A DNA stretch of 57,419 nucleotides from Macrostomum lignano (lineage: Eukaryota), in NCBI GenBank assembly GCA_002269645.1, contig NIVC01004159.1, forward strand, positions 1 through 57,419, in the 5' to 3' direction. Positions 2,416 through 57,419 of this stretch are shown piece by piece. The position numbers and the translations under genes were made by a program. Positions within the stretch are counted from its first letter, which is position 1; each line of letters opens with the position of its first letter. The notes under the pieces were generated by a model. The model was given only the letters and a program-made list of their open reading frames with translations, had not been told where the DNA came from and made no database searches.

Positions 2416-18405
<15,990 letters not shown>

Positions 18406-23130: not shown

Positions 23131-23254
23131 GCCTCAGTTTTTCTCCCCAGCACAGCATTATAATGGCATTTAATTTTTACATGAACCCTTCATGTCTGAC
23201 ATGACGTTTCTTTTATTCTACCATGACGCTTCTTAATTTTTTAAATGACACTTT

Positions 23255-34700: not shown

Positions 34701-37700
34701 AGAGAAGGGGAGGAAAGAGGGGAGAGAAGGGCAGGAAAGAGGAGAGAGAGAAGGGGAGGAAAGAGGGGAGAGAAGGGGAGGAAAGAGGAGAGAGAGAAGG
34801 GGAGGAAAGAGGGGAGAGAATGGGAGGAAAGAGGGGAGAGAAGGGGAGGAAAGAGGGGAGAGAAGGGGAGGAAAGAGGAGAGAGAAGAGGAGGAAAGATG
34901 GGAGAGAAGGGGAGGAAAGAGGGGAGAGAAGGGGAGGAAAGACGGGAGAGAAGGGGAGGAAAGAGGGGAGAGGGGGGGGGAGAGGGGAGAAAAGGAGAGG
35001 AAAGAGGGGAGAGAAGGGGAGGAAAGAGGGGAGAGAAGGGGAGGAAAGAGGGGAGAGAAGGGGAGGAAAGAGGGGAGAGGGGGGGGAGAGGGGAGAGAAG
35101 GAGAGGAAAGAGGGGAGAGAAGGGGAGGAAAGAGGGGAGAGAAGGGGAGGAGGGGAGAGAAGGAGAGGAAAGAGGGGAGAGAAGGGGGAAAGAGGAGAGA
35201 GAAGGGGGGAAAGATAGGAGAGAAGGGGAGGAAAGAGGGAACTCTGTAAGTGAAGGAAAGCTGAAAAGTCAACACAAAACTTGAAAAAAAATCTTACATT
35301 TTTATTTACCCATTTTATACCTGCGCTAACATGCTTTTATTTACATGATTTCCATGCCTTGAAAACAAAAATAATAAATATTATCTTAATAGACTCCGAA
35401 GCAGCAGCAGGACTCTGTCTTTCTGTCTCCGCTGCCTCCGCCGCCGCTAGCGGCCACCCCGCAGCGGCAGCCGCTTGCTGCTCGCAAATCCCGCACAGCC
35501 GGTCTGGGCGCATCGCTCCGTCGCGGATTGAGCGGCCTCAGGCAGAGTTTCCGGCTGGCTGGCAGGCCGTCTGCTGCTGCCGCCGCTGCGGCCAGACGGA
35601 CCGCTGCAGCCTCGGCTGCTGGCTCTGCGACCTGCGGCAAGCCGCAGCATCGGGTGTCGTCTCTGGCTGATTGGACTCTGGTGAGTGTGTCTGTGGCTGA
35701 TTGGACTCTGGTGAGTGTGTCTGTGGCTGATTGGACTCTGGTGAGTGTGTCTGTGGCTGATTGGACTCTGGTGAGTGTGTCTGTGGCTGATTGGACTCTG
35801 GTGAGTGTGTCTGTGGCTGATTGGACTCTGGTGAGTGTGTCTGTGGCTGATTGGACTCTGGTGAGTGTGTCTGTGGCTGATTGGACTCTGGTGAGTGTGT
35901 CTGTGGCTGATTGGACTCTGGTGAGTGTGTCTGTGGCTGATTGGACTCTGGTGAGTGTGTCTGTGGCTGATTGGACTCTGGTGAGTGTATCTGTAGCTGA
36001 TTGGACTCTGGTGAGTGTGTCTGTGGCTGATTGGACTCTGGTGAGTGTGTCTGTGGCTGATTAGACTCTGGTGAGTGTGTCTGTGGCTGATTGGACTCTG
36101 GTGAGTGTGTCTGTGGCTGATTGGACTCTGGTGAGTGTGTCTGTGGCTGATTGGACTCTGGTGAGTGTGTCTGTGGCTGATTGGACTCTGGTGAGTGTCG
36201 TCTCTGGCTGATTGGACTCTGGTGAGTGTGTCTGTGGCTGATTGGACTCTGGTGAGTGTGTCTGTGGCTGATTGGACTCTGGTGAGTGTATCTGTGGCTG
36301 ATTGGACTCTGGTGAGTGTGTCTGTGGCTGATTGGACTCTGGTGAGTGTGTCTGTGGCTGATTGGACTCTGGTGAGTGTGTCTGTGGCTGATTGGACTCT
36401 GGTGAGTGTGTCTGTGGCTGATTGGACTCTGGTGAGTGTATCTGTGGCTGATTGGACTCTGGTGAGTGTGTCTGTGGCTGATTGGACTCTGGTGAGTGTG
36501 TCTGTGGCTGATTGGACTCTGGTGAGTGTATCTGTGGCTGATTGGACTCTGGTGAGTGTGTCTGTGGCTGATTGGACTCTGGTGAGTGTCGTCTCTGGCT
36601 GATTGGACTCTGGTGAGTGTGTCTGTGGCTGATTGAACTCTGGTGAGTGTGTCTGTGGCTGATTGGACTCTGGTGAGTGTGTCTGTGGCTGATTGGACTC
36701 TGGTGAGTGTGTCTGTGGCTGATTGGACTCTGGTGAGTGTGTCTGTGGCTGATTGGACTCTGGTGAGTGTGTCTGTGGCTGATTGGACTCTGGTGAGTGT
36801 GTCTGTGGCTGATTGAACTCTGGTGAGTGTGTCTGTGGCTGATTGGACTCTGGTGAGTGTGTCTGTGGCTGATTGAACTCTGGTGAGTGTGTCTGTGGCT
36901 GTTTGGACTCTGGTGAGTGTGTCTGTGGCTGATTGGACTCTGGTGAGTGTCGTCTCTGGCTGATTGGACTCTGGTGAGTGTGTCTGTGGCTGATTGAACT
37001 CTGGTGAGTGTGTCTGTGGCTGATTGGACTCTGGTGAGTGTCGTCTCTGGCTGATTGGACTCTGGTGAGTGTGTCTGTGGCTGATTGGACTCTGGTGAGT
37101 GTCGTCTCTGGCTGATTGGACTCTGGTGAGTGTGTCTGTGGCTGATTGGACTCTGGTGAGTGTGTCTGTGGCTGAATGGACTCTGGTGAGTGTCGTCTCT
37201 GGCTGATTGGACTCTGGTGAGTGTGTCTGTGGCTGATTGGACTCTGGTGAGTGTGTCTGTGGCTGATTGGACTCTGGTGAGTGTATCTGTGGCTGATTGG
37301 ACTCTGGTGAGTGTGTCTGTGGCTGATTGGACTCTGGTGAGTGTGTCTGTGGCTGATTGAACTCTGGTGAGTGTGTCTGTGGCTGATTGGACTCTGGTGA
37401 GTGTGTCTGTGGCTGATTGAACTCTGGTGAGTGTGTCTGTGGCTGATTGGACTCTGGTGAGTGTGTCTATGGCTGATTGGACTCTGGTGAGTGTGTCTGT
37501 GGCTGATTGAACTACGGTGAGTGTGTCTGTGGCTGATTGGACTCTGGTGAGTGTGTCTGTGGCTGATTGGACTCTGGTGAGTGTGTCTGTGGCTGATTGG
37601 ACTCTGGTGAGTGTGTCTGTGGCTGATTGAACTCTGGTGAGTGTGTCTGTGGCTGATTGGACTCTGGTGAGTGTGTCTGTGGCTGATTGGACTCTGGTGA

Positions 37701-39231
37701 GTGTGTCTGTGGCTGTTTGGACTCTGGTGAGTGTGTCTGTGGCTGATTGGACTCTGGTGAGTGTGTCTGTGGCTGATTGAACTCTGGTGAGTGTGTCTGT
37801 GGCTGATTGGACTCTGGTGAGTGTGTCTGTGGCTGATTGAACTCTGGTGAGTGTGTCTGTGGCTGTTTGGACTCTGGTGAGTGTGTCTGTGGCTGATTGG
37901 ACTCTGGTGAGTGTGTCTGTGGCTGATTGGACTGGTGAGTGTGTCTGCTTAGTGCTACCTTGGGCAGGTGTAATCAATTATTATTATTATTATTATTAGT
38001 GCTACCTAATCGTTAGTCTGTCGTGTCTAGATTTCTTAGCACCTGTCTGTATACCTAAATGTCTGTCTTTGATTGGGTCCGTCAGTTGGTCCGTCAAACA
38101 CTTTCCAGTGTTTGTCTGTTTGTATCCGCAGCATTTGTATATTTAAATGCATGTGACAGCTAATACTTCATAAATATGAAATCCTTTACTATCCCACCCC
38201 GTGCAGCGGCCTGAGCTGTGCTGCTCCAACACCAGCTTGGCCTCGTTGGACAGCTGTCAGTCCCTGCCAGTTGCCTCAACCACCGCTGCTAGGTCCGCCG
38301 CCGCCACCGCCTCGTTCATGAGTTCCGCTACAAACGCCTTTGGAGCCCCGTCAGGCCGTGCTAACCCAGCCACACTGCTGCTCACTGCACAGGTTCATTT
38401 TTTACAGTTTTAATCCCTTTCAAATCTTGGCTAGCAGTTTTTTACTGATTTTATTATCGTGAAATATCACTTCACAAGGCAATGTGTTCTGCGTTTTTTC
38501 CTTTAGTCAGTCAGCCAGTCAGTCAGTCAGTCAGTCAGTCAGCCAGTCAGTCAGTCAGTCAGTCAGTCAGTCAGCCAGTCAGTCAGTCAGCCAGTCAGTC
38601 AGTCAGTCAGTCAGTCAGTCAGCCAGTCAGTTAGTCAGTCAGTCAGTCAGTCAGTCAGTCAGTCAGTCAGTCAGTCAGTCAGTCAGTCAGCCAGTCAGTC
38701 AGTCAGTTAGTCAGTCAGTCAGCCAGTCAGTCAGCCAGTCAGTCAGTCAGTCAGTTAGTCAGTCAGTCAGTCAGTCAGCCAGTCAGTCAGTTAGCCAGTC
38801 AGTCAGTCAGTCAGTCAGCCAGTCAGTCAGCCAGTCAGTCAGTCAGTCAGTCAGTCAGTCAGTCAGTCAGTCAGTCAGTCAGTCAGTCAGTTAGTCAGTC
38901 AGCCAGTCAGTCAGCCAGTCAGTCAGTTAGCCAGTCAGTCAGTCAGTCAGTTAGTCAGTCAGCCAGTCAGTCAGTCAGTCAGTCAGTCAGTCAGCCAGTC
39001 AGTCAGCCAGTCAGTTAGCCAGTCAGTCAGTCAGTCAGTCAGCCAGTCAGTCAGTCAGTTAGTCAGTCAGTCAGCCAGTCAGTCAGCCAGTCAGTCCCCA
39101 CCCATCACCCGCAGGCGGCTCGCGAGGACCTGCCCAAAAGTTCGTCATCCTCTCGACTAAGCATTGCCGGACTGTCAGCCAAGCGCCTGCGCAAGCAGCT
39201 GAGCTCGTGGAGTTTGTCGCGTGGAAAATAA
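27625..39231 (+). CDS. ECT2: ECT2/Pebble-like RhoGEF (BRCT repeats + DH + PH), multi-exon
   Basis: BRCT motifs ([68 protein letters not shown]; SEWFW). DH motifs ([65 protein letters not shown]), then PH and tail ([19 protein letters not shown]). A phase-0 exon chain is consistent throughout: 27625-27771, 28435-29016, 29922-30875, 32099-32662, 33481-34176, 35393-35680, 38207-38392, 39115-39231 (TAA). Confidence 0.93.
27870..28350. repeat. ~31-bp minisatellite (TTCCTTACCCCATAGACCCCACCACCCCTGT)n
   Basis: Directly visible; first ECT2 coding intron. Confidence 0.9.
29027..29735. repeat. 23-bp minisatellite (GAGAATCGGCTCTAATCCACCCT)n
   Basis: Directly visible; starts immediately after the donor at 29017. 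Confidence 0.93.
30985..31915. repeat. (CAGA)n/(CA)n compound microsatellite
   Basis: Directly visible. Confidence 0.93.
32680..33450. repeat. 21-26-bp minisatellite (GTGTGCTCATATATCTGAGTAGG)n
   Basis: Directly visible; fills the ECT2 DH/PH intron. Confidence 0.93.
34385..35242. repeat. Purine-only ~22-bp minisatellite (GAGAGAAGGGGAGGAAAGAGGG)n
   Basis: Directly visible. Confidence 0.92.
35654..37948. repeat. 30/31-bp satellite (GATTGGACTCTGGTGAGTGTGTCTGTGGCT)n, ~76 units
   Basis: Directly visible; every unit contains CTG|GTGAGT. Confidence 0.96.
37961..37996 (+). mobile_element. Extremely 5'-truncated non-LTR retroposon (3' end plus (ATT)n tail)
   Basis: TGGGCAGGTGTAATCAATT(ATT)n is flanked by the perfect direct repeat TAGTGCTACCT (37950-37960, 37997-38007). 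The same 3' motif occurs at 56166-56186. Confidence 0.75.
38505..39095. repeat. (CAGT)n microsatellite
   Basis: Directly visible; last ECT2 intron. Confidence 0.95.
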
Positions 39232-43523: not shown

Positions 43524-44822
43524 TCAGAGACTAACATCCAGACTGTTTCGCAGAACGACATGCCAAAGCTTGATCCAGAGACCTTCGAAAAATTCATTTT
43601 TATAAGCTGTTAGGAAAATATAGTCCATAATCCTTTCAGAGGCCAGACTAGGGACCAAAGTGGTGTATCCGTGGCCTCTCCAGAACCCGGCGATCGGGAC
43701 ACCCATCGAAGCTGCCAGAGTGCCGGTCACGTGAACATCGTCAATCCAGAAGAACTGCTTGAACAGAGAGCACAGGTAGATACTGGCGACGTGCTTAGCG
43801 TTGAGAATGTAGCCGAAGCCCTCGCAGTAGGTTGGGTAATATTTTTGAGGAAACTCTACCTTCTTAACCAGCCACTTAGCCATGCTGCCTCTGCCGATTC
43901 TCTGCGGCTTCGCGCCACGGGTGGCGGAGCAGTAGAAACTGGATGGAGCGCCCTGGCTCAAGAAGGTCGCCAAGTGTGCAACGTCCGTGAACGTGTCGTC
44001 GTCGACCTTGACGAGATACTTGGCCGACTGGCAGTGTCGCAGGACCCACTCGTACACAGCCAGGTGCTTGATGCTCATGTTCCTGTAGTTCTCGGTGTAG
44101 TTCAGCTGCACGATGTCGCCGAACCGGTCGCTCTCCGCATCGAGCAGAGCCTCGAGCTGCGCTCCGGTCGCTCCGGACTCGTCCGAGTCTCCCGACGCTG
44201 GCCGGCCGAGAAAGAAGGCCACCTCGATGCGGTACCGTCCGACGTACCTGAGCGATCCCCACGTTCTGCGGATGGTCGCTCGACGACCGAGGTTCTTCGC
44301 GTTGCTGTGAACCGCCACCAATGCCAGCAGGTCGCCCGCGGTGCACAGGTGATCCGCCATGTGCACAAAGTCGTAGGTTTGCACGTAACGAAGTGCCGGA
44401 CTCTGGAGGCCTCCGCACTTGCCGGCTGCGCTCTGCAGCTGCTTCTGGGTGACCGCCGAACCCAGCGACTTGAGTTTAGTCAGCAGCTTTGAGTACAGGC
44501 GCGAGTCGCTCGCTCGCTTAATTCGCTCCATCAAAGTCAGCGGAGGTGCTGTGGTCGTGTGCAGCTTTCTCTGTGTTTTCTTTAAAGTACTTAGCCTGTT
44601 TTTCGTTGTGTTGGTAACGGGTAAACTATTGTTTATTAGAAGTTCAGTCTTTAAATCTGCTTCTACTCTGGACTTGGTTTTGGGCGCATCAGCTGCGGCC
44701 TTCAAAGAGCCGTAGACGCTGCTGCCGGTGACGCAGAGTTGAAGCGTTACCGCAGTGTACAGCAGCATCAGCAGTAGCAGCCGAGAGTATCGTTTCTCAC
44801 TGAATGTCAGCGTCCGAAGCAT
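43524..44822 (-). CDS. GT31 family beta-1,3-galactosyltransferase-like protein, copy A (single exon)
   Basis: N-terminal TM helix (LLLLMLLYTAVTLQL), RRATIRRTWG, FFLG, ESDRFGDIVQ, ENYRNMSIK, DxD motif KVDDD, YPTYCEGFGY, WIDDVHVTG. First ATG at 44822; the track ORF extends to a TTG at 44846. Confidence 0.9.
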   Translation of the reverse strand: MLRTLTFSEKRYSRLLLLMLLYTAVTLQLCVTGSSVYGSLKAAADAPKTKSRVEADLKTELLINNSLPVTNTTKNRLSTLKKTQRKLHTTTAPPLTLMERIKRASDSRLYSKLLTKLKSLGSAVTQKQLQSAAGKCGGLQSPALRYVQTYDFVHMADHLCTAGDLLALVAVHSNAKNLGRRATIRRTWGSLRYVGRYRIEVAFFLGRPASGDSDESGATGAQLEALLDAESDRFGDIVQLNYTENYRNMSIKHLAVYEWVLRHCQSAKYLVKVDDDTFTDVAHLATFLSQGAPSSFYCSATRGAKPQRIGRGSMAKWLVKKVEFPQKYYPTYCEGFGYILNAKHVASIYLCSLFKQFFWIDDVHVTGTLAASMGVPIAGFWRGHGYTTLVPSLASERIMDYIFLTAYKNEFFEGLWIKLWHVVLRNSLDVSL

Positions 44823-46660
44823 TCTTGTCCTAAGATTGTGCCTCAAATCAGATATTCTATTGTACGCAATGATTGCGGAAAGCAGCCCGACCTACATGTT
44901 TTTAGTTTTAACTATGCAATTGTGTAATGTAATAAAATACACTCTCTTTTCTGCCTTATTTATGCAAATAGCTAGCTAGTGGTGTGCAGTAGTTTGCGCC
45001 GCAAAATTTCTAGAAGCGTTCGTTCATTGGCTGCTACCAAAAAGTAATTGCTTCTACGTCGTATATTCACGGCCTAGTTGTGTCTTTTTTATATATTGGA
45101 CTCGAGGCGGAGGCCGCAGCCTTTTAATTATCCTTTGATGAATTAATTTTTTTTTCCATTTTTAATAAGTCTTGCTACTGAATTTTGTTGTACGATTACA
45201 AAGTTTGCGTTGCTTGCTTAAGGCTAGGTCACACCGCCATCAAATACGACCAAATTTCCAGTGTGATCGCGAGACTTGTACAGCAATTTTCATTCCTTTC
45301 AGTACATCGGTCCTGACTCCTGTTATTATAGATGTCTAATTTGTCGGCAGTGTTAATGACTTGTTGAAAACGAGGGTAAATATTGGGGGGGGGTTAATAA
45401 ATAACTAATAGCCTAAGGTCGATTAGCACGATTTTAGGATAAATGAACGTTACTTGACGTTGTTTTCCACTAATTTACTTTACGGAGGATAAATTTACGT
45501 TAATTTGCGAGTTTGTTAACCAAATTAACCTACAAAAGTGACTGTGTTTAACTAATCTAAATTCGCTTTTTTCGAAAGTTAAACTGTGGTAAATTAACGA
45601 ATCAAAAGTTTCTTTTCGTTTATTTTGCTTCCAAGATTAACCCTCGTTTTTAACGGGGAGCTTATATAGTGAGCATCTGATACACTTATGCTAAGATCTA
45701 GAATATATTAACTTTCCCATTAACCTTATAGTCACTACAGTTGGATTAAAGCCTCGTCATTGTTGACTACTGGTTTCGAGGTTGTAATTTTAATATATAT
45801 GTTTCTGAGTGTAGATTAAAAGTTAGTAACCTTCTGAGCCTTCGAAAGCGCTAGTGTATGCACATGTATACATGTGTTGTATGCGTGCATTTTATCAAAG
45901 GTTAGATTGGTTGATAAAATCAGCTAACTCAATATTTCACAAATATACTCAGCAATATTAAAACCCAGCAACTTCTGTAGATTAAACAGATTGTACTCGT
46001 AACTCAAACATTGCAACTATGTACGTGAAACTAATAAACGGTTTTATCATTATTTTTGTATTTATGCACCCATTGCTCAGCGTGTTAATATAGTTGTGCA
46101 ACTTTCAAGGCAGATCCTAGAAAAGTTGATTACTGGCGCAACGGGTGCATGGCAACTTTTCAAATGTTTCTGAGTACATATTGAGTACATAGGGAAAACT
46201 GTATCTGTACCTACGACCACTTCTTGGTGCAGTTTTTGCATACACAATTCGCTTTCAAATTATTTCAATTTTTTTCTCGTAATATCTTAGCTTTTAAAAG
46301 CCAACAACGTTGCTGTGCATTTCTGTTACATAGATGTGTCGCTCCACATTCGCTGATGTATTTAGCAGCCGACACTAACAAAGCGGTCATGTCAGAGCAG
46401 CAGAAGCCGCAGTCTATGGTCATATTATATACCCCAGGTTTTCGCTCTGCGGCCCAGCTAGGTACATAAAATACGAGCATAGTTGAGGCAGCATCAGTCA
46501 GCTCAATTGTCTCTTTAAAGAAACGTGCACAATGCAGTTTAAATAGAAGCGAGGATCATGTAGATCTAGCTATATACACACTTAAATTGTGCGACTTCAG
46601 CTCAACTGTAAAGGCTGTTGCACAAATAAAACTAGCTAACTGTTAAACAGAAAGGATACA

Positions 46661-48211
46661 ATGAACCACATCGGCGGTCTATCTTCGTGCGGAAAAGGTG
46701 CGCCAAATTCGAACCGTCGACTAAAGATAGTCCGACTGGCGACGCACATAAGTCTGGGACGATGGACATGCTTGATCCTACTTCTGCTGTACCTCACTGT
46801 GACTCTACAGCTAACAGTTCGTGGCAGCAGCCTGTTGAGTCACGAAAAACAGCTTGTACCAAAGGTTGTCGGCGCCAGCTCGCTTCCAGACGCTCGAAAT
46901 TTGGATGGTGAGCCTAGTTTAGAGCTGAGCAGCAATGCTGAACTTGAAGTCAGAAGCATTCAGCGCCCCATCTCGGCGCTCAAGTCTAGCCTACCAAAGA
47001 TTAGAAAAATCAAATCGTTGAGACAAGGCATTGCAGACGAGCCTTTATCTAACGAGTACCTAGCTGGAAGAGACAGTTTCATTTCTGAGAATCCATTCCG
47101 AAATCTTCTCCCTAAACAAGGAATTGAAAATCCAGCCAAGAATATGGAAGAGAAATATAGCGATCCCAGTCTTCAACCTTCGAGTGATAACTTAGTTGAC
47201 CTGAATATCATGGAGCGAATCGAGGGAGCGAGCGACTCGCGCCTGTACTCAAAGCTGCTGACTAAACTCAAGTCGCTGGGTTCGGCGGTCACCCAGCAGC
47301 AGCTGCAGAGCGCAGCCGGCAAGTGCGGAGGCCTCCAGAGTCCGGCACTTCGTTACGTGCAAACCTACGACTTTGTGCGCATGGCGGATCACCTGTGCAC
47401 CGCGGGCGACCTGCTGGCGTTGGTGGCGGTTCACAGCAACGCGAAGAACCTCGGTCGTCGAGCGACCATCCGCAGAACGTGGGGATCACTCAGGTACGTC
47501 GGACGGTACCGCATCGAGGTGGCCTTCTTTCTCGGCCGGCCAGCGTCGGGAGACTCGGACGAGTCCGGAGCGACCGGAGCGCAGCTCGAGGCTCTGATCG
47601 ATGCGGAGAGCGACCGGTTCGGCGACATCGTGCAGCTGAACTACACCGAGAACTACAGGAACATGAGCATCAAGCACCTGGCTGTGTACGAGTGGGTCGT
47701 GCGACACTGCCAGTCGGCCAAGTATCTCGTCAAGGTCGACGACGACACGTTCACGGACGTTGCACACTTGGCGACCTTCCTGAGCCAGGGTGCTCCATCC
47801 GGTTTCTACTGCTCCGCCACCAGAAGCGCGAGACCACAAAGATTTCCTCGCAAAGCAAAATGGTCTGTTAGTTATCGCGAGTTTCCCGGCAGTTTCTACC
47901 CAACCTACTGCGAGGGCTTCGGCTACATTCTCAACGCTAAGCACGTCGCCAGCATCTACCTGTGCTCTCTGTTCAAGCCGTTCTTCTGGATTGACGATGT
48001 TTACGTTACGGGAATTTTAGCAACATCAACGGGTGTCCCAATATCCGGGTTCTGGAGAGGTCACGGATACGCCCCTTTGGTGCCGAGTCTTGCGTCCGAA
48101 GCAATAGTGGACTACATTTTTCTGACCGCAGAGCGCAGCGACTTTTTTGATGTTGTTCAGCACAAACTGTGGCGTTCCGTATTGCAGCACAGTCTTAATG
48201 TGGCGTTGTAA
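46661..48211 (+). CDS. GT31 family beta-1,3-galactosyltransferase-like protein, copy B (single exon)
   Basis: 516-aa ORF with a type II membrane anchor, stem and Galactosyl_T-like domain (KVDDD, YPTYCEGFGY, IDDVYVTG). Confidence 0.92.
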   Translation: MNHIGGLSSCGKGAPNSNRRLKIVRLATHISLGRWTCLILLLLYLTVTLQLTVRGSSLLSHEKQLVPKVVGASSLPDARNLDGEPSLELSSNAELEVRSIQRPISALKSSLPKIRKIKSLRQGIADEPLSNEYLAGRDSFISENPFRNLLPKQGIENPAKNMEEKYSDPSLQPSSDNLVDLNIMERIEGASDSRLYSKLLTKLKSLGSAVTQQQLQSAAGKCGGLQSPALRYVQTYDFVRMADHLCTAGDLLALVAVHSNAKNLGRRATIRRTWGSLRYVGRYRIEVAFFLGRPASGDSDESGATGAQLEALIDAESDRFGDIVQLNYTENYRNMSIKHLAVYEWVVRHCQSAKYLVKVDDDTFTDVAHLATFLSQGAPSGFYCSATRSARPQRFPRKAKWSVSYREFPGSFYPTYCEGFGYILNAKHVASIYLCSLFKPFFWIDDVYVTGILATSTGVPISGFWRGHGYAPLVPSLASEAIVDYIFLTAERSDFFDVVQHKLWRSVLQHSLNVAL

Positions 48212-48561
48212 AATTCCCCTGCAAGCAGCTTGCGTGCCTCTCGAATAAGCACTTTGAAAGTCACTATTGTTCTACGAGCTAAATGCAGCTGTTTTGAGCA
48301 CGTTTGAGTACGCTATCCCTATCCCTTGACTTCGATAGACTCTCCCTCTCGTTCAGACGCACTTGATGGCAATTTTGTTAAGGGCAAGACTCACCTCAGT
48401 TACTCGCATTTATATGTACTGTATAGTAGCCACCAGTTTTTGAGCAATGGATTTGAGCAAAATTCAAGTCAAATAGAACTTTCTTGTTTCTCCTCCGCTT
48501 TTATTTAACGATGGACTTTTTTCGGTAGTAAAAACTTTAAGTCTGTTAAGTTTTGTTTAAT

Positions 48562-48812
48562 GGCGTCCCCGTCTCTTGGTAGGTGCCCCTGTCTCTTAGA
48601 GGGCGCCCCTGTCTCTTGGTGGGTGCCCCTGTCTCTCGGTGGGTGCCCCTGTCTCTTAGAGGGCGCCCCTGTCTCTTGGTGGACGCCCCTGTCTCTTGGT
48701 GGACGCCCCTGTCTCTTGGTGGACGCCCCTGTCTCTTGGTGGACGCCCCTGTCTCTTGGTGGACGCCCCTGTCTCTGGTGGACGCCCCTATCTCTTGGTG
48801 AGCGCCCCTGTC
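48562..48812. repeat. ~20-bp minisatellite (GGACGCCCCTGTCTCTTGGT)n
   Basis: Directly visible. Confidence 0.9.
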
Positions 48813-50251
48813 TGGTGCGCGCCCCTACCCCTACTTCCTAGATGGTTGGATGCCAGACTAAACTTCATTATAAAACTTCAAATTAAATTTTTCATTCGCA
48901 ATTTTTACAAAATTTCATTTGAAAAAAATCCCAATATGGCTAAGCAATCAGATTCAATATGAAATGCTAATTAGGCAAGCTAAATGCCATTATGGCAGGC
49001 TAGAGAGTGCTGTAATAAAGATGTACAATATACTTCAGCCGGAACATACATGTATTTGTACAAAGCATTTTTATTATAGTTGGCATTTTAAATACACTAA
49101 TTATAAACCAAACTATACACTGTCTATATGGTCAAAAGGTAAATGCGTGGGAAGCTGCATAATTGCATGCTTCAACTGAGAGCTGCGAAGTTGGCATTTT
49201 ATTTTTAATCTTTACTCTACGAATGTGCGAGATTTCCAAATGCCAATGTCTGTGCCTTAAACTCATTAGCATGCACCGACAGTATACCTTTCGTGTTCTT
49301 TTTGTTTTTTATTCATTCAAATCGGGCGGCTCCCAGCAGTTCGACGTTATAGCGTCCTAGAAGAGATTTTACGTCAGCAAACCAGAGAAAGCCACAGACA
49401 ACAGAAATCAATTTGGTTTTAACTGCGAACACTTACAAGTAAAGGAGGCCTAAAGTAAATAATGGTGCAAAGAGGACTATACGTTATAGAATCAGTCTGG
49501 TAAACAGAGAGAGGATACCAAATGCATACGTGACTGGTGTTTTAGGAGTTTTATGTCTACGAAATAACCCGAATTTGATACCGAAAAAGCTGAATTTCCA
49601 GGCGATTTCAGTTGTTAGCCTATGGTAAATGCGAACTCTACGTACTGGGCTAAATTGGCACCAAATGGGACACAATAAGAACCAAAAAGGAAGCAGAAAA
49701 AGTACTTAAAGGTACCGATTTAAGCCTAGCCGTTTGTGTAGTAGACAGTAACGGCGGGTGTAAAATAGGTAAAAATAAAGGTGTTTTTGCCATAGACAGT
49801 GATGGGGTGTGAAATGAAGTCAGTCGGTGGCAAGGAGTTCTATAAGTAGCAATCTGGAGTGGAAGCGAGTTTTACCTCATGAGGCCACGCCAATTGTAAA
49901 GAAAAGGAGCCAGCACTTAATGTCTATGGCTCTGTCTGACTCTGTCTATGCTAGTCTGGGGGGTCTTTCTCGAAAGCAACTTACGATCGGACCATAGACG
50001 TAAGTTGGGGAGGAAGTGCTCTTGGCTTGCTCGAAAGTCTCGCAACTTGAAACGACTTATGATCGATCGCAACTTTGCGAGCTCGTAACTTTGTGCGCAA
50101 AAGACTGTTTCTCGAAACGTTGGTATGTCTATGGTCTTTCGTAAGGTTAATCTTAACCCTACGACTGCTCGGTATCAGTCGTGAGAAGCACTTATCGAAG
50201 AGATCTCAGGGTACGATATCTTTAATACTGCAAGTGACAGCAGCAAAGACC

Positions 50252-50493
50252 ATGGCGACCAAGTGCCAACCCAACTTCTCGCCTGGAGAAAAGGAAGAGT
50301 TGTTGAATTACGTAAACAAGTACCTCGATACTATCAGATTCTAAAGACCAAAAAGTCGAGATGCAATGGAAAAAGAAAGCAGTTTGGGAGGCTATCAGAT
50401 CAGATCAGAATCGCGCATAATGCAAGGACCAGCGTGGTCCCGAAGGGTACGATCTCGACCCAATGCGCGGTCAGCAACATGCAGACGCAGTAG
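50252..50493 (+). pseudogene. Frameshifted Myb/SANT-like DNA-binding protein remnant (Harbinger accessory gene)
   Basis: MATKCQPNFSPGEKEELLNYVNKYLDTI resembles the Myb_DNA-bind_5 N-terminus (PNF...EK..LL..V.KY...I). It continues in another frame (..QIRIAHNARTSVVPKGTISTQ..SNM..). Confidence 0.55.
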
Positions 50494-52000
50494 GACAGTA
50501 GCGAGTACGAGCTATGAAGTCCATTTAATTAACTTTGAAATTAATTTTAAGCACCAATATGTATAAGATAATAACTTTATAATGCCCATTCTGTGGTCAG
50601 AAAGTCCGAGGACCATTGAATGCGGCCGAGGACTTTCTGGCCATAGACATTGCATTATAATGCTATTATAGTATGTAAACCAAGGACAACTTACGAGTAT
50701 GCATTGGCAACTGAAAGCATGCGCATACGGATGGGCCATAGAACAATGCTTTTAAACGAGCCTCATACTTTTTTCGCTTTGAATTGGCTCGTTTCCGGTC
50801 CTGAGTTATCAAGTTGTCCTTGATGTAAACTTCACTTACGCCAAACTGCATGGATTTCAATGAGCAGGACGCTTACCAAAATTTCAAATGCCATATACAA
50901 ATGTATACAGTATTGGAAAATTACTTAAGACACATACAAGCTGACTAGCTGGAGCAGGCTTTAACCACTTTTCAACTCGTGCTGTACGTCGGTCTTGACG
51001 AAATCGATTTGTCGTTCGACCAATTATTTATGGATATGGAGCCAGCTCAAGATGCGAAAAGAGTCAATAACGATGACACACCTACGAGACCACTTGATAA
51101 TAATACTGACGGCTGAAGATTTACAATGAAATCTGGACGACATATAAAGGCATCCAGTTCCCAGGCTCGACTTATGGCTGAGACTCCTCAGTGATGGCAC
51201 TATCCCTAGAACTGTTTTGTCTCTGCATGGTTGTCTCCAGCTCTCAACAGATAGACGTTCGCGTTTGAACCTCTTGGATCGACAGGTCAGGATGCTGTAC
51301 CACGTGCTGAGAAAAAACGTTCTGTCGACAAGGTGGAGATTATCGATGAGAGGGTTGTGGTGTTTTTCAAGTGATTGTAGTAAAAAATTCGATGAGCCTT
51401 GGTTGAAGCTAATTGATTAAACTGTTATTTGCTATTATCTAGATTATTTGCTATTTTGTACGAGCTAATAAATATATGTTTGCCTTCCTGAAGACACTTT
51501 TGCTTTATGTTTCTTACGGACCATTGCATCATATATGCCGAAAATATACGTACAAAAAGAATATATACCGAAGCAGACAAAAACCATTGGAATCGTTGCC
51601 CACTTCGGCCATAGACGACATTTTTCGCTTCTCGATAACTTGCGAACTGCGTAAGTTGCGAGAACCCTAGGTTAGCTTCGAGAAACAGCTTTACAGCTGG
51701 TCTTACGCCAAGCGCAAAGTTCGGACTTACGCCTGCACTTACCATAGGGTCTCCGAGGGTCTTTCTCGAAACTATTGTAAGTTCTATGTAAGTGTAGTCG
51801 TTAGTCAGAACTTTGCACTCACCGTAAGATTGGTCGTAAAGCTGTTTCTCGAAGCTAACTTAGAGTTCTCGCAACTTACGCAGGTCGCAAGTTGACAGGA
51901 AGCAAAAAATACTTGTCTATGGTCAATGGTGGTATCGTTTCCGACGATATGTGCCGCGTAGTATATAGAAGCATATACGTGTATTCAAGAAGCTGAGAAA

Positions 52001-52330
52001 ATGGACTTCATGCTTGCGATTGCGCTACTCCGGATGAGAGCTGCTGAACGTGCAGTGGGTCGCGATCGTCGACTTCGGGATTATGCTGATCCGTTGTATA
52101 TGCGCGATTCCGAACTAATTGACCGCTATCGATTTCCTCGTGTCATCATTTTGGACATTGTGACACTTGAACGAGACTCATGTCAAATTTTGAACGTTTT
52201 CTTGGGAGCCACGTTGAAATTAATCAGACCATGGCCGGATTCCATTTGATCGCCGGACTGCCACATGTCACTGGTGCTATCGACTGCACACATGTCGCTA
52301 TCATGAAACATGAAATCGTGCAGGGGGTGT
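52001..52330 (+). pseudogene. Internally deleted Harbinger (HARBI1-like) DDE transposase remnant
   Basis: RDYADPLYMRDSELIDRYRFPRVIILDIV (N-terminal motif) is followed in another frame by FHLIAGLPHVTGAIDCTHVAI (first catalytic Asp motif GxIDCTH). The HTH segment between them and the rest of the DDE domain are missing. Confidence 0.8.
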
Positions 52331-54073
52331 CGCAAGCTCTCGCCGCCCATGTCCAGATATCTAACCTATTCTAGAAATCTAAAAATGTGTGCTTTTTAAA
52401 AACATGAGTACAATACTTCTTTTGAATCATTAACAATGCTATGTGTTTATGGCTTTTTCTGAAACATACACAACGAAGAACAGATGTAATAAGGTAGCAG
52501 TCAAAACTGATTGTAAACTGTTCAATATTGATTAGGAGTTGTCAAAAATGAAGCGGACTTTCGGGGTACACAAACCATAAGTGTCAGTTTTGAAGCAACT
52601 CTGTCAAAATAGAATCCGACTTTGCGGCCCAACCAGTCAGGCTATTTTAGTCTCTGTGTGTAAGAGGATGGAGAAAAATAAATTTTATCAATACTTGTAG
52701 ATCCCAAAAGCAAGGTCAGAATGAGCTGATTTTGCACAGATAACTTTCGCTCCGTTCAGGCTTTCATTGGATTACTTTGTTACCGATTTCTCCCAGGAGA
52801 AGTTGACTAAATGTGTTTTGTCAAAATTGAACCAGAGTTTGTCAAAATTCAAGCTTGATCTGTCAATATTGATTGTAGATTTTGAGTGCCCGACCATAGA
52901 GTGTCAATATTGAAGAGGAGTTTGTCGGTTTCGAAGTTCTCCTTGTTCAAAATCGAGGGTAAAATGGTGTAGCTATTAAAATGATTCTTACGACGGTTTC
53001 GAGCAGTCGTAGATTTACGACCCACCTTACGAAAGACCATAGACATACGATCGTTTCGAGAAACAGCCTGTCGAGGAAAATTATGAGATCGTAAAGTTGC
53101 GACCGCTCTTACGCTAAGTCAACCTGCGACTCTTTTGAGCAAACCGTAGGTGCGACTATCGCAACTTATGTCTATGGCCGATCGTAAGTAGCTTTCAAGA
53201 AAGACCCCCTGGCCTCCAGGTAAAGCTGAAAAACTAGTTTCCACTCCAGGTTGCTAATTATAGAACTCCCTAGTCAGTGGAAATGAAAGTGTTTTGCCAT
53301 AGACAGTGACAGCGAGTGTGAAATGAAGTCAGTCGGTGGAATCAAGGAGTTCTATAAGTAGCAATCTGGAGTGAAAGCGAGTTTTACCTCATGAGGCCAC
53401 GCCAATTGTAAAGAAAAGGAGCCAGCACTGAATGTCTTATGGCTCTGTGCGACTCTGTTTATGCTAGTCTGGCCTCGAGGTAAAGCTGAAAAACTTGTTT
53501 CCACTCCAGGTTGCTAATTATAGAACTCCTTGGTCAGTGGAAATGAAGGTGTTTTGCCATAGACAGTGACAGCGGGTGTGAAAGCAGGTAAAAGTAAGAG
53601 CAGAAGTTCAATTTTTGCTTACTTCACTTAAAGGCTGATATTCAGTCTCGGCTATTGCAAACTATTATTCTGAAAGCTCTGGAAAATCAAGTCATTTTCC
53701 GCAAAACATGAGTTGACTGTCTTCAAGCACAAGCCGTAATTAATAATAATCTCACAGATAAGACATTTTCTGTCATCAAATAAAGGCCAAAACTCTCTTG
53801 AGGTTTTCAAACTCTTCAGATGCAGCCTCTTGAGAGAGTGAGAACACAAACTATGTCACCAGTGGACAACAGCCAGTGAACTCGAGAGGTTTGCACGGTG
53901 AATAGAACCCAGCGCTTGGCGTGCAGAAACTCTGTCTGAGAATAATCTACAGCAGAGGCTAAATTTCTTGCTCACAATGCGAACCTTAAACCAAACAATA
54001 ATGCTGAGCATAAGGTAGAAAAGATGTATAAAAAGAGGCGTAGAAAAAGATTTTTAGTGATTCGTAGAGCCCA

Positions 54074-55729
54074 ATGAAGCTTATAAAGAGTGTGTCAGCT
54101 ATTTCTCGGTTCACTATGCTCAACCGTCTGCAACGATGGACAGCTTTACTGCTCCAGCTAAGCCTTCGACATTGGAACTTACTTCTTCTGTTAATGATTT
54201 CCCTGACCCTGTCTGCGCAGCTGTCATTTGGAATCAAGTTATTTCTTGGCCGGCCTAGAAAACAATTCAGCGCTCCAGTCATTGAGACAGAACCATCGTT
54301 AAACAAAGGTAAATCATTAAAGAGCATTTCAGCAGAACCGAAGCTTGAACTCAGTGGCACCACTTATAACAAGCCACCGAAAAGGTTTGATAATTTAAAA
54401 CCCAAGCCGCCACTAAAAACTACTGGCGAGATGGGAAAAGATTTGTTTAAAGAAGCAAGGGCCGATTCCCAACACATAGGTTACTTTTTGGCTGATAGAA
54501 AACATTTCATCCTTGAAGATCCATTCGACGGCCCAGTTGCCCATGTGAAGTCTCAAAAAGGAAGCAGTGACGGTCGTGAACACGTAAAAAAGTTCCAAAA
54601 AGGTTCATTCACTGATCAGAAAGATCACAAAGAAACTACAATACACGAAGGCGTCAATCCAACAAAAGAAATAGAAGCTCAACAACCGCAGCAAAACAAA
54701 ACGATTGAGCCACAAACTCTCATGGAGCGAATTAAGCGAACGAGCGACTCGCGCCTGTACTCAAAGCTGCTGACTAAACTCAAGTCGCTGGGTTCGGCGG
54801 TCACCCAGCAGCAGCTGCAGAGCGCAGCCGGCAAGTGCGGAGGCCTCCAGAGTCCGGCACTTCGTTACGTGCAAACCTACGACTTTGTGCGCATGGCGGA
54901 TCACCTGTGCACCGCGGGCGACCTGCTGGCGTTGGTGGCGGTTCACAGCAACGCGAAGAACATCGGTCGTCGAGCGACCATCCGCAGAACGTGGGGATCG
55001 CTCAGGTACGTCGGACGGTACCGCATCGAGGTGGCCTTCTTTCTCGGCCGGCCAGCGTCGGGAGACTCGGACGAGTCCGGAGCGACCGGAGCGCAGCTCG
55101 AGGCTCTGATCGATGCGGAGAGCGACCGGTTCGGCGACATCGTGCAGCTGAACTACACCGAGAACTACAGGAACATGAGCATCAAGCACCTGGCTGTGTA
55201 CGAGTGGGTCGTGCGACACTGCCAGTCGGCCAAGTATCTCGTCAAGGTCGACGACGACACGTTCACGGACGTTGCACACTTGGCGACCTTCTTGAGCCAG
55301 GGCGCTCCATCCAGTTTCTACTGCTCCGCCACCCGAGGCGCCAAGCCGCAGAGATCTCCGTTGCCTTACATGTCAAAATGGTTGGTAAGCTACGACGAGT
55401 TTCCCGGCAGTTTCTACCCAACCTACTGCGAGGGCTTCGGCTACATTCTCAACGCCAAGCACGTCGCCAGCATCTACCTGTGCTCTCTGTTCAAGCAGTT
55501 CTTCTGGATTGACGATGTTTACGTGGCCGGAGTTTTAGCAGCCTCGCTAGACATTCCAATCGCAGGGTTTTGGAGAGGTCACGGATATACAACCATAGTA
55601 CCCAGCCTGGCTTCTGAGGGCATCGTCAATTACATTTTTCTGACGGCTTTTGACAGCGCATTTTTCGATTCCCTGTGGGTAAAACTTTGGCAGGCTGTGC
55701 TGAAGTACAGTCTGGACGTAAATTTGTAA
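54074..55729 (+). CDS. GT31 family beta-1,3-galactosyltransferase-like protein, copy C (single exon)
   Basis: 551-aa ORF with a TM anchor (LLLLLMISLTLSAQL), long stem and the same catalytic motifs (KVDDD, YPTYCEGFGY, IDDVYVAG). Confidence 0.92.
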   Translation: MKLIKSVSAISRFTMLNRLQRWTALLLQLSLRHWNLLLLLMISLTLSAQLSFGIKLFLGRPRKQFSAPVIETEPSLNKGKSLKSISAEPKLELSGTTYNKPPKRFDNLKPKPPLKTTGEMGKDLFKEARADSQHIGYFLADRKHFILEDPFDGPVAHVKSQKGSSDGREHVKKFQKGSFTDQKDHKETTIHEGVNPTKEIEAQQPQQNKTIEPQTLMERIKRTSDSRLYSKLLTKLKSLGSAVTQQQLQSAAGKCGGLQSPALRYVQTYDFVRMADHLCTAGDLLALVAVHSNAKNIGRRATIRRTWGSLRYVGRYRIEVAFFLGRPASGDSDESGATGAQLEALIDAESDRFGDIVQLNYTENYRNMSIKHLAVYEWVVRHCQSAKYLVKVDDDTFTDVAHLATFLSQGAPSSFYCSATRGAKPQRSPLPYMSKWLVSYDEFPGSFYPTYCEGFGYILNAKHVASIYLCSLFKQFFWIDDVYVAGVLAASLDIPIAGFWRGHGYTTIVPSLASEGIVNYIFLTAFDSAFFDSLWVKLWQAVLKYSLDVNL

Positions 55730-56192: not shown

Positions 56193-56475
56193 ACATGTAC
56201 AATTCAGCCAAAGTCGAGGTTCAGTAAGTGCCAATAGGAACCTAACATGCAGACGTACAGAAGACCATGCTCACTCGCTTCCAGCGGCTCATCTGCCTCG
56301 TTGCTCTGGTGCCTCACGTAGAGAAGGACATCCGGCGGCGTCTTTTCCAGCTGATGAGAGCGTTGGGACCGAGGCCCTGTATTAGAGGACCCAGCCCGTT
56401 CACCACTTATGCGGTTGTTCTGACTTCTACCGGCCTATATAGGCACGGCCACGCGCGAACTCGTCGATACGTGAA

Positions 56476-56702
56476 CGCACCCTCATCTGACGCACCCTCA
56501 TCTGACGCACCCTCATCTGACGCACCCTCATCTGACGCACCCTCATCTGACGCACCCTCATCTGACGCACCCTCATCTGACGCACCCTCATCTGACGCAC
56601 CCTCATCTGACGCACCCTCATCTGACGCACCCTCATCTGACGCACCCTCATCTGACGCACCCTCATCTGACGCACTCTCATCTGATGCACCCTCATCTGA
56701 CG
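56476..56702. repeat. 15-bp minisatellite (GCACCCTCATCTGAC) x~15
   Basis: Directly visible. Confidence 0.95.
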
Positions 56703-57419
56703 ACCGTTTGATCTTAATTTTCTGGGTTACGTCTTTTGTTGCTTTTGTTGTGCTTGTTATTTTCGTCACTTTCGACAATTAGCTTTAACTTACAATTCAT
56801 CATAATTACGATAAATTAAGTAAGCTTACACGAAAAGTGAGGCAACCAATAATCTAGTTATATACTTATGTGTGTTCCAGTATTAATAATACTAATGCAT
56901 TATATGAGTGAGTGTAATAAGGGACTGAGCATCTGTATACGCAAGACTTTCTTGCACAGTGGGCATATAGCTGCAGTTGCTATCATTGTCAGGCATTGTT
57001 TGATCAACGTTGAGTCAACATTTGACAAGCTCACCATTGCAGTGTCTATAATAAGCAATTAGGCATTTCATACAAAGTCAGAGTCAAATAGAGAGTCCAA
57101 TTTCTTTTGTTTACTCATACCTCGGCAGTTTTTCGCAAGCAGATGCTTGTTGACAGATTAAGCTGACGGAAATTCGTCGCTTTTGCATGCATGCATGCAA
57201 TTTAGATCGCAGAATTGACTAAGTTCGGCGAGTTGGGTTCGCAATAATTTTATTGTTGATAGTCTTAGCAGCCGTTTTATTGAACTTTCTAAGGTTAAAA
57301 TGGCTGACAGAATTGATAAGTTTTCGGAAGTGACGTCATTTTGAAGATTAGAGGCATCTAGAAGTAATATATTGTTTTAAGTAGCACATAACGAAAACGA
57401 TTGTTTCAGAGACGCCTGT

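What the first reader, a model, noticed from the sequence alone, without database searches (positions are those of the whole stretch)
43524..55729. Mosaic GT31 glycosyltransferase trio: homogenised catalytic core, hypervariable loop and C-terminus
Seen: the three single-exon paralogues share a ~593-nt block that is nearly base-identical (B 47229-47821, C 54741-55333, A ~44512-43920; SDSRLY...YCSATR, only a handful of residue changes). They also share a second short near-identical block (YPTYCEGFGY...FWIDDV). The short loop between the blocks differs sharply: PQRIGRGSMAKWLVKKVEFPQKY, PQRFPRKAKWSVSYREFPGSF, PQRSPLPYMSKWLVSYDEFPGSF, including an indel. The C-terminal ~65 aa are diverged at many sites, and the N-terminal stems show little recognisable similarity. 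Established: in GT31 enzymes (B3GNT2, Fringe) the region between DxD and the xED/DD catalytic motif and the C-terminal part contribute to acceptor binding, while the N-terminal Rossmann part binds UDP-sugar. Inference: recurrent gene conversion keeps a common donor-binding chassis while acceptor-specificity segments diversify, giving a local glycan-diversification cassette (for example mucus, adhesive or surface glycans).
Basis: partly seen in the sequence, partly recalled or inferred. Interest (0 to 1): 0.8.

Follow-up and report, generated by a model that had tools for sequence, protein, structure and literature searches.

The report
Gene-converted flatworm glycosyltransferase trio
Three neighbouring sugar-transferase genes of the flatworm Macrostomum lignano are old duplicates whose catalytic core is kept almost base-identical by ongoing gene conversion, while the stem, one active-site loop and the tail stay gene-specific: a clean but ordinary case of partial concerted evolution.

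Summary
The window is a whole contig (NIVC01004159.1) of Macrostomum lignano. It holds three intact single-exon GT31 (Pfam Galactosyl_T) genes: A 43524-44822(-), B 46661-48211(+), C 54074-55729(+).

- **Homogenised segments:** a 612-nt core and a 105-nt second block are 97-100% identical between paralogues, with dS 0.007-0.10.
- **Gene-specific segments:** the stem, a 25-27-codon loop and the 69-codon tail are saturated at synonymous sites.
- **Gene conversion is strongly supported.** Two further copies of the locus lie in the same assembly. Stem, loop and tail group by gene (100% bootstrap), but the core groups by locus copy (94%).
- **Constraint does not explain the core.** Against an outgroup paralogue, core and tail are about equally conserved.
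- **Composition:** GC3 is about 0.81 in the converted tracts and about 0.37-0.67 elsewhere.
- **Structure:** by homology to B3GalT5 and B3GNT2, the unconverted loop and tail are the GT-A hypervariable regions HV2 and HV3, which build the acceptor site.

"Hypervariable" and "diversifying" are not supported. These segments are anciently diverged and conserved between locus copies. They are under purifying selection (dN/dS about 0.06-0.45), and the first-shell acceptor-contact positions are identical in all three genes.

This is a new example of a known phenomenon. Function is untested.

The parts
43524..44822 (-). Gene A: single-exon GT31 glycosyltransferase, 432 aa from the ATG at 44822, stop at 43524-43526
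   Evidence: ORF; Pfam PF01762 E 2.4e-37. Its counterpart in L001 is annotated as 432 aa from the same ATG.
46661..48211 (+). Gene B: single-exon GT31 glycosyltransferase, 516 aa
   Evidence: ORF; Pfam E 4.4e-39. It is annotated on this contig, NIVC01004159.1.
54074..55729 (+). Gene C: single-exon GT31 glycosyltransferase, 551 aa
   Evidence: ORF; Pfam E 4.7e-39. The AF2 model shows a TM helix at 7-57, a disordered stem at 58-203 and a folded GT-A domain from residue 216. Foldseek matches B3GalT5 with TM 0.85.
43920..44531 (-). Converted core of A (aa 98-301)
   Evidence: 98.0-98.9% nt identity to B and C, dS 0.007-0.034, GC3 0.81
47210..47821 (+). Converted core of B (aa 184-387)
54722..55333 (+). 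Converted core of C (aa 217-420). It carries the DxD motif (D393-D395) and starts where the folded domain starts.
   Evidence: DxD aligned to B3GalT5 D156-S157-D158
43839..43919 (-). Unconverted loop of A (central part of HV2, the beta6-beta7 loop)
   Evidence: 52-57% nt identity to B and C. It is 90% identical to its counterpart in L001. HV2 mapping.
47822..47896 (+). Unconverted loop of B (2 codons shorter)
55334..55414 (+). Unconverted loop of C
43734..43838 (-). Converted block 2 of A (G-rich loop YPTYCEGFGY to the xED-type catalytic base in FWIDDV)
   Evidence: 98% nt identity, 1-2 synonymous differences in 21 synonymous sites, GC3 0.77-0.86
47897..48001 (+). Converted block 2 of B
55415..55519 (+). 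Converted block 2 of C (D481 aligns with the catalytic base D243 of B3GalT5)
43527..43733 (-). Unconverted C-terminal tail of A (HV3)
   Evidence: 68% nt identity to B and C, dS saturated, dN 0.21-0.24; 97% identical to its counterpart in L001
48002..48208 (+). Unconverted C-terminal tail of B
55520..55726 (+). Unconverted C-terminal tail of C

Best explanation
A, B and C are ancient tandem paralogues of a flatworm GT31 (beta-1,3-glycosyltransferase-like) type II membrane enzyme. Their divergence is about as old as the split from a fourth, unlinked paralogue, D.

Repeated interlocus gene conversion between the three genes overwrites a 612-nt tract and a 105-nt tract. B and C are direct repeats and A is inverted. 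The two tracts encode the folded GT-A scaffold: the Rossmann part with DxD, then the glycine-rich loop to the xED-type catalytic base. They therefore stay near-identical and have become GC3-rich.

Conversion does not persist in three places: the non-homologous stems, the central 25-27 codons of the beta6-beta7 loop (HV2), and the 69-codon tail (HV3). These remain gene-specific and evolve under purifying selection.

**Shown:** the mosaic; its age structure; conversion after the locus copies separated; the correspondence of the unconverted segments to HV2 and HV3.

**Inferred:** that the unconverted islands persist because converted variants are selected against, which would mean different acceptor preferences. 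They could instead persist only because heterology and the indel block heteroduplex extension. It is also inferred that all three share one donor sugar.
For: 1. **Synonymous divergence.** Between paralogues, dS is 0.007-0.04 in the core and 0.05-0.10 in block 2. It is saturated (>0.9 to undefined) in stem, loop and tail.
2. **Constraint is not the cause.** Against outgroup D, the core is 58-67% aa identical and the tail 57-62%. The tails of A, B and C are only 64-68% identical to each other.
3. **Tree discordance across three locus copies** (window, L001, L002). Stem, loop and tail group by gene with 100% bootstrap. The core groups L1_A+L1_B+L1_C at 94% and W_A+W_C+L2_C at 86%.
4. **Site patterns**. 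Two synonymous sites (alignment codons 307 and 349) are fixed differently in all three paralogues of the window versus L001. Blocks are shared by A=C, or by B=C, only in the window copy. The near-identical copies W_C and L2_C differ at 6 core sites, and at 3 of these one of the two copies carries the base seen in A or B.
5. **Timing.** Within-locus paralogue dS in the core (0.007-0.04) is below the dS between locus copies in the stems (0.06-0.10).
6. **Composition.** GC3 is 0.80-0.86 in converted tracts and 0.36-0.67 in unconverted ones of the same ORFs. Intergenic GC is 0.37-0.42. This is as expected from GC-biased conversion.
7. **Permutation tests** give p<=1e-4.
8. **Structural mapping.** The model is a GT31 fold. 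The loop is the centre of the B3GalT5 K172-T217 lid loop and of B3GNT2 Loop beta7-beta8 (HV2). The tail is HV3.
9. **Retention.** All copies keep intact ORFs and catalytic motifs.
Against: - D has GC3 of about 0.9 along its whole length. The GC3 step is therefore not proof of GC-biased conversion. A GC-rich ancestral state that conversion merely preserved would look the same.
- The excess of differences in the core between W_C and L2_C is not significant on its own (6/612 versus 4/1044, p=0.19).
- No expression, read-level or population data were available.
- Nothing here shows that the three enzymes differ in acceptor use. Positions homologous to first-shell acceptor contacts are identical in A, B and C.
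- The neutral reading of the tract boundaries (heterology and the indel) cannot be excluded.
Confidence: 0.85

Rival explanations
1. The conversion is real, but the tract boundaries are neutral. The loop and tail escape only because sequence divergence and the 2-codon indel stop heteroduplex extension. On this view the three enzymes are functionally redundant, or differ only through their stems and expression.
For: - First-shell acceptor-contact positions (R421, A423, K435, W436, Y448, Y451, E453, D481 in C numbering) are identical in all three genes.
- There is no sign of positive selection.
- An indel sits in the loop.
Against: - A converted 105-nt block lies beyond an 81-nt unconverted island. 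This is hard to obtain without either selection restoring the island or independent very short tracts.
- Loop and tail are conserved between locus copies. Pooling the three window-versus-L001 pairs by hand gives dN/dS of about 0.45 (loop) and 0.28 (tail), so they are not drifting freely.
- The unconverted parts coincide exactly with HV2 and HV3.
Confidence: 0.4
2. A, B and C arose by a recent triplication of one gene. Each copy later acquired its stem, loop and tail by recombination with other, old paralogues.
For: Core dS is close to zero, which taken alone also fits a recent duplication.
Against: - A search of 5.8 billion proteins found no other M. lignano GT31 gene carrying these loops or tails. 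Only the copies of A, B and C, the paralogue D and a D-like fusion model were found.
- This scenario needs three imports per gene at the same boundaries.
- The core groups by locus copy, which demands exchange after the copies separated in any case.
Confidence: 0.05
3. Assembly or polishing cross-talk made the cores look identical.
For: M. lignano is a neopolyploid. In its reference assembly, 93% of read pairs map to several loci (PMC10733133).
Against: - The pattern recurs on three contigs, with copy-specific and paralogue-specific differences inside the core.
- The boundaries are sharp and lie at the same codons in all copies.
- The core has a different base composition (GC3 0.81 against about 0.5), which polishing cannot create.
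Confidence: 0.02
4. Nucleotide-level constraint keeps the cores identical without any exchange, for example through an overlapping antisense gene or a structured RNA.
For: Long antisense and alternative-frame ORFs lie inside each core, for example 43671-44492(+) at 273 aa.
Against: - Such open frames are expected in GC3-rich sequence.
- The core of D is only 61-68% nt identical to A, B and C.
- The core tree follows locus copy, not gene.
- There is no Rfam match.
Confidence: 0.02

Closest known systems
Partial concerted evolution of tandem paralogues, with segments that resist conversion (textbook cases recalled from my own knowledge: primate red/green opsins, RHD/RHCE, gamma-globins; Teshima-Innan type models)
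   Same: Interlocus conversion homogenises most of the coding sequence. Short segments stay paralogue-specific. Trees disagree between segments. GC content is raised in the converted tracts.
   Different: Here the genes are GT31 glycosyltransferases of a neopolyploid flatworm. The protected segments are whole structural modules (HV2, HV3, stem) rather than single tuning sites. No functional difference has been demonstrated.
Human beta-1,3-galactosyltransferase 5 (B3GalT5, PDB 8zwp) and B3GNT2 (6wmm, 7jhi): GT31 enzymes
   Same: - Pfam Galactosyl_T match and GT-A fold (TM 0.85 and 0.70-0.76 respectively).
- DxD motif, KW in the beta6-beta7 loop, glycine-rich loop and the (I/E)DD/EDV catalytic base all align.
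- The N-terminal helix followed by a disordered stem in the model fits a type II membrane layout.
   Different: - Only 20-26% identity.
- Longer, disordered stems (97-216 aa).
- About 45 extra helical residues precede the Pfam domain.
- Donor and acceptor are unknown.
UGT1A and GCNT2 loci with multiple variable first exons and shared constant exons (PMC1885805; seen only as a title and abstract)
   Same: It is a functional analogy: several enzymes share one constant part and differ in a variable part. That the shared UGT1A exons encode the UDP-sugar-binding part and the variable exons the substrate-binding part is my own knowledge.
   Different: There, sharing is physical, with one copy of the constant exons joined by splicing. 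Here each gene has its own copy, and identity is maintained by recombination.

Membership tests
GT31 / Pfam PF01762 Galactosyl_T | Profile match above the curated cut-off | tested here: met
   129-135 bits against a cut-off of 23 for all three genes
GT31 / Pfam PF01762 Galactosyl_T | DxD metal/donor motif | tested here: met
   VDDDTF; D393-D395 of C aligns with D156-S157-D158 of B3GalT5. It is invariant in the 17-sequence alignment.
GT31 / Pfam PF01762 Galactosyl_T | xED-type catalytic base at the start of helix F, and a glycine-rich loop | tested here: met
   WIDDV: D481 aligns with D243 of B3GalT5 and D333 of B3GNT2. YCEGFGY aligns with the G-loop.
GT31 / Pfam PF01762 Galactosyl_T | GT-A fold close to solved GT31 structures | tested here: met
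   AF2 model: most 10-residue blocks of the catalytic domain have mean pLDDT 85-96, falling to 50-55 around residues 501-520. Foldseek: 8zwp TM 0.85, E 1.7e-22; B3GNT2 TM 0.70-0.76.
GT31 / Pfam PF01762 Galactosyl_T | Inverting beta-1,3 transfer from a UDP-sugar | not testable with these tools
   Needs an enzyme assay
Interlocus gene conversion (concerted evolution) | Sharp drop of synonymous divergence in a delimited tract, statistically significant | tested here: met
   dS 0.007-0.10 against saturated values; permutation p<=1e-4 and Fisher p=2e-21
Interlocus gene conversion (concerted evolution) | Paralogues group by genome or locus copy inside the tract and by gene outside it | tested here: met
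   Segment NJ bootstraps; site patterns
Interlocus gene conversion (concerted evolution) | Identity not explained by stronger constraint on the tract | tested here: met
   Against outgroup D the core is 58-67% and the tail 57-62% aa identical
Interlocus gene conversion (concerted evolution) | GC enrichment of converted tracts (GC-biased conversion) | tested here: inconclusive
   GC3 is 0.80-0.86 against 0.36-0.67. However, D is GC3 0.87-0.96 throughout.
Interlocus gene conversion (concerted evolution) | Same pattern across species (cores group by species) | not testable with these tools
   No orthologues of A, B or C from other Macrostomum species are in the searchable collections
Diversifying (positive) selection on acceptor segments | dN/dS above 1, or fast turnover between close copies | tested here: not met
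   - Between paralogues, tail dN/dS is 0.06-0.28.
- Between window and L001 counterparts, pooling the counts by hand gives about 0.45 for the loop and about 0.28 for the tail.
- One small-count exception exists: the A tail, with 5 nonsynonymous against 1 synonymous change.

The most novel reading that the evidence does not exclude
The unconverted HV2 loop and HV3 tail are actively protected by selection because A, B and C glycosylate different acceptors, while conversion shares one donor and catalytic scaffold among them. This would be a recombinational counterpart of the 'shared constant exons' design of UGT1A. It would also be a natural module-swap experiment showing that GT-A acceptor specificity resides in HV2 and HV3.
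Probability: 0.35. Interest if true: 0.6.

Novelty: new member of a known kind. Interest (0 to 1): 0.4.

Why it matters
The process at work, partial concerted evolution, is well known, so the finding does not change any concept. It does provide an unusually clean natural dissection of a GT-A glycosyltransferase.

Everything assigned to the common scaffold is held identical. Only the stem, HV2 and HV3 differ between the three enzymes. If the enzymes differ in acceptor use, this trio would be a ready-made test of the modular model of glycosyltransferase specificity (Taujale 2020; Kadirvelraj 2021).

It also shows that interlocus conversion has been active since the subgenomic copies of the neopolyploid M. 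lignano genome separated. That matters for assembling and phasing this genome.

Tried and rejected
- **Constraint as the cause of core identity:** rejected using outgroup D.
- **Positive selection on loop and tail:** tested with Nei-Gojobori counts and not found.
- **Excess allelic differences in the core (W_C versus L2_C) as proof of very recent conversion:** suggestive but not significant (p=0.19).
- **GC3 as proof of GC-biased conversion:** weakened by D being GC3-rich throughout.
- **Orthologues in other Macrostomum species:** none in the protein collection. Only Schistosoma-level relatives at 35-38% identity and one D-like Logan fragment were found.
- **Hidden RNA genes in the window:** none.
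- **Literature on these genes, or on gene conversion in M. lignano:** nothing relevant.
- **Mapping variable residues on 3-D coordinates:** not possible because the tools return no coordinates. I used residue-by-residue homology to B3GalT5 and B3GNT2 instead. The tail beyond residue 492 of C could not be aligned to a solved structure by sequence, so F356 and the C-His of B3GNT2 were not mapped.


Full report
**What is there**

The window is the complete 57,419-bp contig NIVC01004159.1 of the Macrostomum lignano assembly GCA_002269645.1. Three intact ORFs lie at its 3' end:
- A: 43524-44822 on the minus strand, 432 aa from the first ATG. The mechanical ORF list starts it at a TTG at 44846.
- B: 46661-48211 on the plus strand, 516 aa.
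- C: 54074-55729 on the plus strand, 551 aa.

A and B are head to head, 1.8 kb apart. B and C are direct repeats, 5.9 kb apart. All three match Pfam Galactosyl_T (PF01762) at E 2e-37 to 5e-39.

An AlphaFold model of C shows a long N-terminal helix (7-57), a disordered stem (58-203, pLDDT below 50) and a confident GT-A domain from residue 216. That domain superposes on human B3GalT5 (8zwp, TM 0.85) and on B3GNT2 (TM 0.70-0.76). The DxD motif, the KW pair of the beta6-beta7 loop, the glycine-rich loop and the catalytic Asp of the xED-type motif all align.

**The observation**

It is correct in every particular. In a codon alignment:

| Segment | Size | nt identity between paralogues |
|---|---|---|
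| Stem | 97, 183 and 216 codons in A, B, C | 37-44% (forced alignment; unrelated level) |
| Core | 204 codons (612 nt) | 98.0-98.9%, with 5-7 aa changes |
| Loop | 25-27 codons | 52-71%; B lacks two codons |
| Block 2 (YPTYCEGFGY..FWIDDV) | 35 codons (105 nt) | 98% |
| Tail | 69 codons | 64-68% |

A short motif in the membrane anchor is still shared by A and B. blastn homology starts abruptly at the first codons of the core and stops at the end of the CDS. Shuffling alignment columns never reproduced the longest identical run or the best fragment (p<=1e-4 for all six within-locus pairs).

**Why it is gene conversion and not constraint, recent duplication or artefact**

Five lines of evidence bear on this.

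1. *Synonymous sites.* Paralogue dS is 0.007-0.04 in the core and 0.05-0.10 in block 2, but saturated in stem, loop and tail. For A versus B the synonymous differences are 5 of 149.5 sites in the core against 34 of 49.5 in the tail (Fisher p=2e-21).

2. *A yardstick for constraint.* A fourth, unlinked paralogue D (P0004, on L003) has a phase-0 intron in the middle of the region homologous to the core. D is 58-67% identical in amino acids to A, B and C in the core and 57-62% in the tail. The tails of A, B and C are only 64-68% identical to one another. Core and tail are therefore about equally constrained. Judged by the unconverted parts, the four genes are about equally old. The core would be expected at roughly 65% identity if left alone.

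3. *More copies of the locus.* M. lignano is a neopolyploid whose reference assembly holds three homeologous subgenomes (PMC10733133; PMC5704211). Accordingly, the same assembly carries two more copies of this locus.
   - L001 (NIVC01001957.1) has the full trio in the same arrangement and is 86-95% identical to the window, intergenic DNA included.
   - L002 (NIVC01004610.1) is about 99% identical and holds C and the 3' end of B.

   Neighbour-joining trees with bootstrap group stem, loop and tail strictly by gene (A, B, C; 100%). The core groups by locus copy instead: L1_A+L1_B+L1_C at 94% and W_A+W_C+L2_C at 86%.

4. *Individual sites*.
   - Two synonymous positions are fixed to one base in all three paralogues of the window (and in L002) and to another base in all three paralogues of L001.
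   - Both ends of the core are shared by A and C in the window copy only.
   - Sites in the middle of the core are shared by B and C in the window copy only.
   - The near-identical copies W_C and L2_C differ at six core sites. At three of these, one of the two copies carries the base seen in A or B. That excess is not significant by itself.

5. *Timing.* Within-locus core dS (0.007-0.04) is lower than the dS between locus copies in the stems (0.06-0.10). Several conversion events therefore post-date the separation of the locus copies.

An assembly or polishing artefact is not tenable. The mosaic recurs on three contigs with copy-specific differences, and the converted tracts have their own base composition.

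**Composition**

GC3 is 0.80-0.81 in the core and 0.77-0.86 in block 2. In the same reading frames it is 0.37-0.55 in the stems, 0.36-0.67 in the loops and 0.51-0.54 in the tails. Surrounding intergenic DNA is 37-42% GC. This is what GC-biased gene conversion produces over a long time.

I do not treat it as proof. D is GC3 0.87-0.96 along its whole catalytic domain, with an intron of 52% GC. A GC-rich ancestral state that conversion has simply preserved would look the same.

The high GC3 also explains the long open frames on the opposite strand and in other frames of each core. I regard those as by-products.

**What the unconverted parts are**

In the framework of Taujale et al. (PMC7185993), GT-A enzymes have a common core from which three hypervariable regions extend. 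HV2 is the beta6-beta7 segment and HV3 is the tail after beta8, and these regions carry the family-specific acceptor determinants.
- In B3GNT2, HV2 (residues 275-307) supplies five of seven acceptor-contact residues. HV3 supplies Phe356 and the metal-binding C-His (PMC7948508).
- In B3GalT5, the long loop K172-T217 closes over the donor and forms the acceptor cleft (PMC11969544).

Residue-by-residue mapping from the phmmer alignments puts residues 408-455 of C on that loop. The paralogue-specific stretch (421-447) lies in its centre. The 69-residue tail follows the xED helix and is therefore HV3. The 5' edge of the core (residue 217) coincides with the start of the folded domain.

There are two caveats.
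- The converted core also contains HV1 and about 45 residues that are poorly conserved with D.
- The positions homologous to the first-shell acceptor contacts are identical in A, B and C. These contacts are B3GalT5 K185, E188, W198, Y210, F213, S215 and D243, and B3GNT2 I276, A279, H282, Y289 and Y303. The variable residues lie between them, so any specificity difference would concern second-shell or more distal parts of the acceptor.

**What is not supported**

'Hypervariable' and 'diversifying' are the wrong words.
- Loop and tail are ancient differences, as old as the split from D.
- They are well conserved between the locus copies. The loops are 90-98% nt identical and the tails 92-97%.
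- They evolve under purifying selection. Between paralogues, tail dN is 0.18-0.30 with saturated dS, giving dN/dS of 0.06-0.28.
- Pooling the three window-versus-L001 pairs by hand from the counts gives these dN/dS values:

| Segment | dN/dS |
|---|---|
| Stem | about 0.64 |
| Loop | about 0.45 |
| Tail | about 0.28 |
| Core | about 0.25 |

No data bear on the suggested role in mucus, adhesive or surface glycans. I found no paper on these genes.

**How it most likely works**

Mismatch-tolerant homologous repair between the three genes copies stretches of the scaffold-coding DNA from one to another. This involves direct repeats for B and C, and an inverted partner for A. The stems share no homology, so tracts cannot enter them.

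The 81-nt loop island flanked by converted DNA on both sides, and the unconverted tail, can be explained in two ways.
- *Selection against convertants that lose a gene-specific HV2 or HV3.* I put this at roughly 0.35-0.5.
- *A purely mechanical barrier from heterology and the indel.* I put this at roughly 0.4.

The coincidence with HV2 and HV3, and the conservation of these segments between locus copies, favour the first. The identity of first-shell contact positions and the absence of any functional data keep the second alive.

One corollary concerns the intron. D has an intron inside the region homologous to the core, and none of A, B or C has it. Conversion across the core would also spread an intron-less state among the three genes. 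This is inference only.

**Comparison with what is known, and novelty**

Membership in GT31 is met on every sequence and fold criterion that could be tested. Activity is untested.

The evolutionary process is a textbook one: partial concerted evolution of tandem paralogues with conversion-resistant segments. The primate opsin, RH and globin examples are from my own knowledge.

The nearest functional analogy among sugar transferases is the UGT1A/GCNT2 'variable first exon, shared constant exons' arrangement (PMC1885805; I saw only its title and abstract). There one copy of the constant part is shared by splicing. Here three copies are kept alike by recombination.

I class the finding as a new member of a known kind. 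It is of moderate interest because the protected segments coincide so neatly with the acceptor modules of the GT-A fold, and because it documents conversion after the subgenome copies of a neopolyploid separated.

Noticed in passing
window 4362-40517: The first ~43 kb of the contig is dominated by long minisatellite arrays. Examples are 13435-15528 (15 bp x 139), 23222-25449 (23 bp x 97) and 35654-37947 (30 bp x 76, 96% matches), many with extreme strand skew. The long ORFs listed there lie mostly within these arrays or the skewed DNA around them. The 30-bp array is also present, but shorter, at the matching place of L001.
   Followed up: partly
window 56267-56782 (+), tandem repeat 56475-56702: A 171-aa ORF just downstream of gene C contains 15 copies of a 15-nt unit encoding (APSSD)n. 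The region is conserved in L001 and L002. It is unclear whether this is a gene.
   Followed up: no
window 43524-44822 and 54074-55729: Genes A and C of this contig are absent from the protein collection. B of this contig (P0020) and the A, B and C genes of L001 and C of L002 are all there. This is probably an annotation gap in the deposited record.
   Followed up: partly
L003 10001-12143 (paralogue D, P0004): D has a 763-nt phase-0 GT..AG intron (10799-11561) after codon 266, inside the region homologous to the converted core. A, B and C lack it. D is also GC3 about 0.9 throughout.
   Followed up: partly
window 49773-50193 and 52979-53583: Between B and C lie a 187-nt direct repeat (91%), a ~235-nt inverted repeat (76%) and a local 115-nt duplication. 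This may be the remains of a mobile element. The B-C spacer is largely unalignable between the window and L001.
   Followed up: no
window 48567-48813: A 20-bp tandem repeat (12 copies) lies about 350 nt downstream of the stop codon of B.
   Followed up: no
window 43671-44492 (+), 47486-47944 (-), 54761-55279 (-): Antisense ORFs of 273, 152 and 172 aa, plus further alternative-frame ORFs, lie inside the three cores. I interpret them as by-products of GC3 of about 0.81, not as genes.
   Followed up: partly
P0010 (950 aa, UniRef A0A1I8FG..): A 'Rab-GAP TBC domain-containing protein' model of M. lignano carries a frame-shifted, D-like GT31 sequence in its C-terminal half. It looks like a gene-model fusion from an older assembly.
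   Followed up: no
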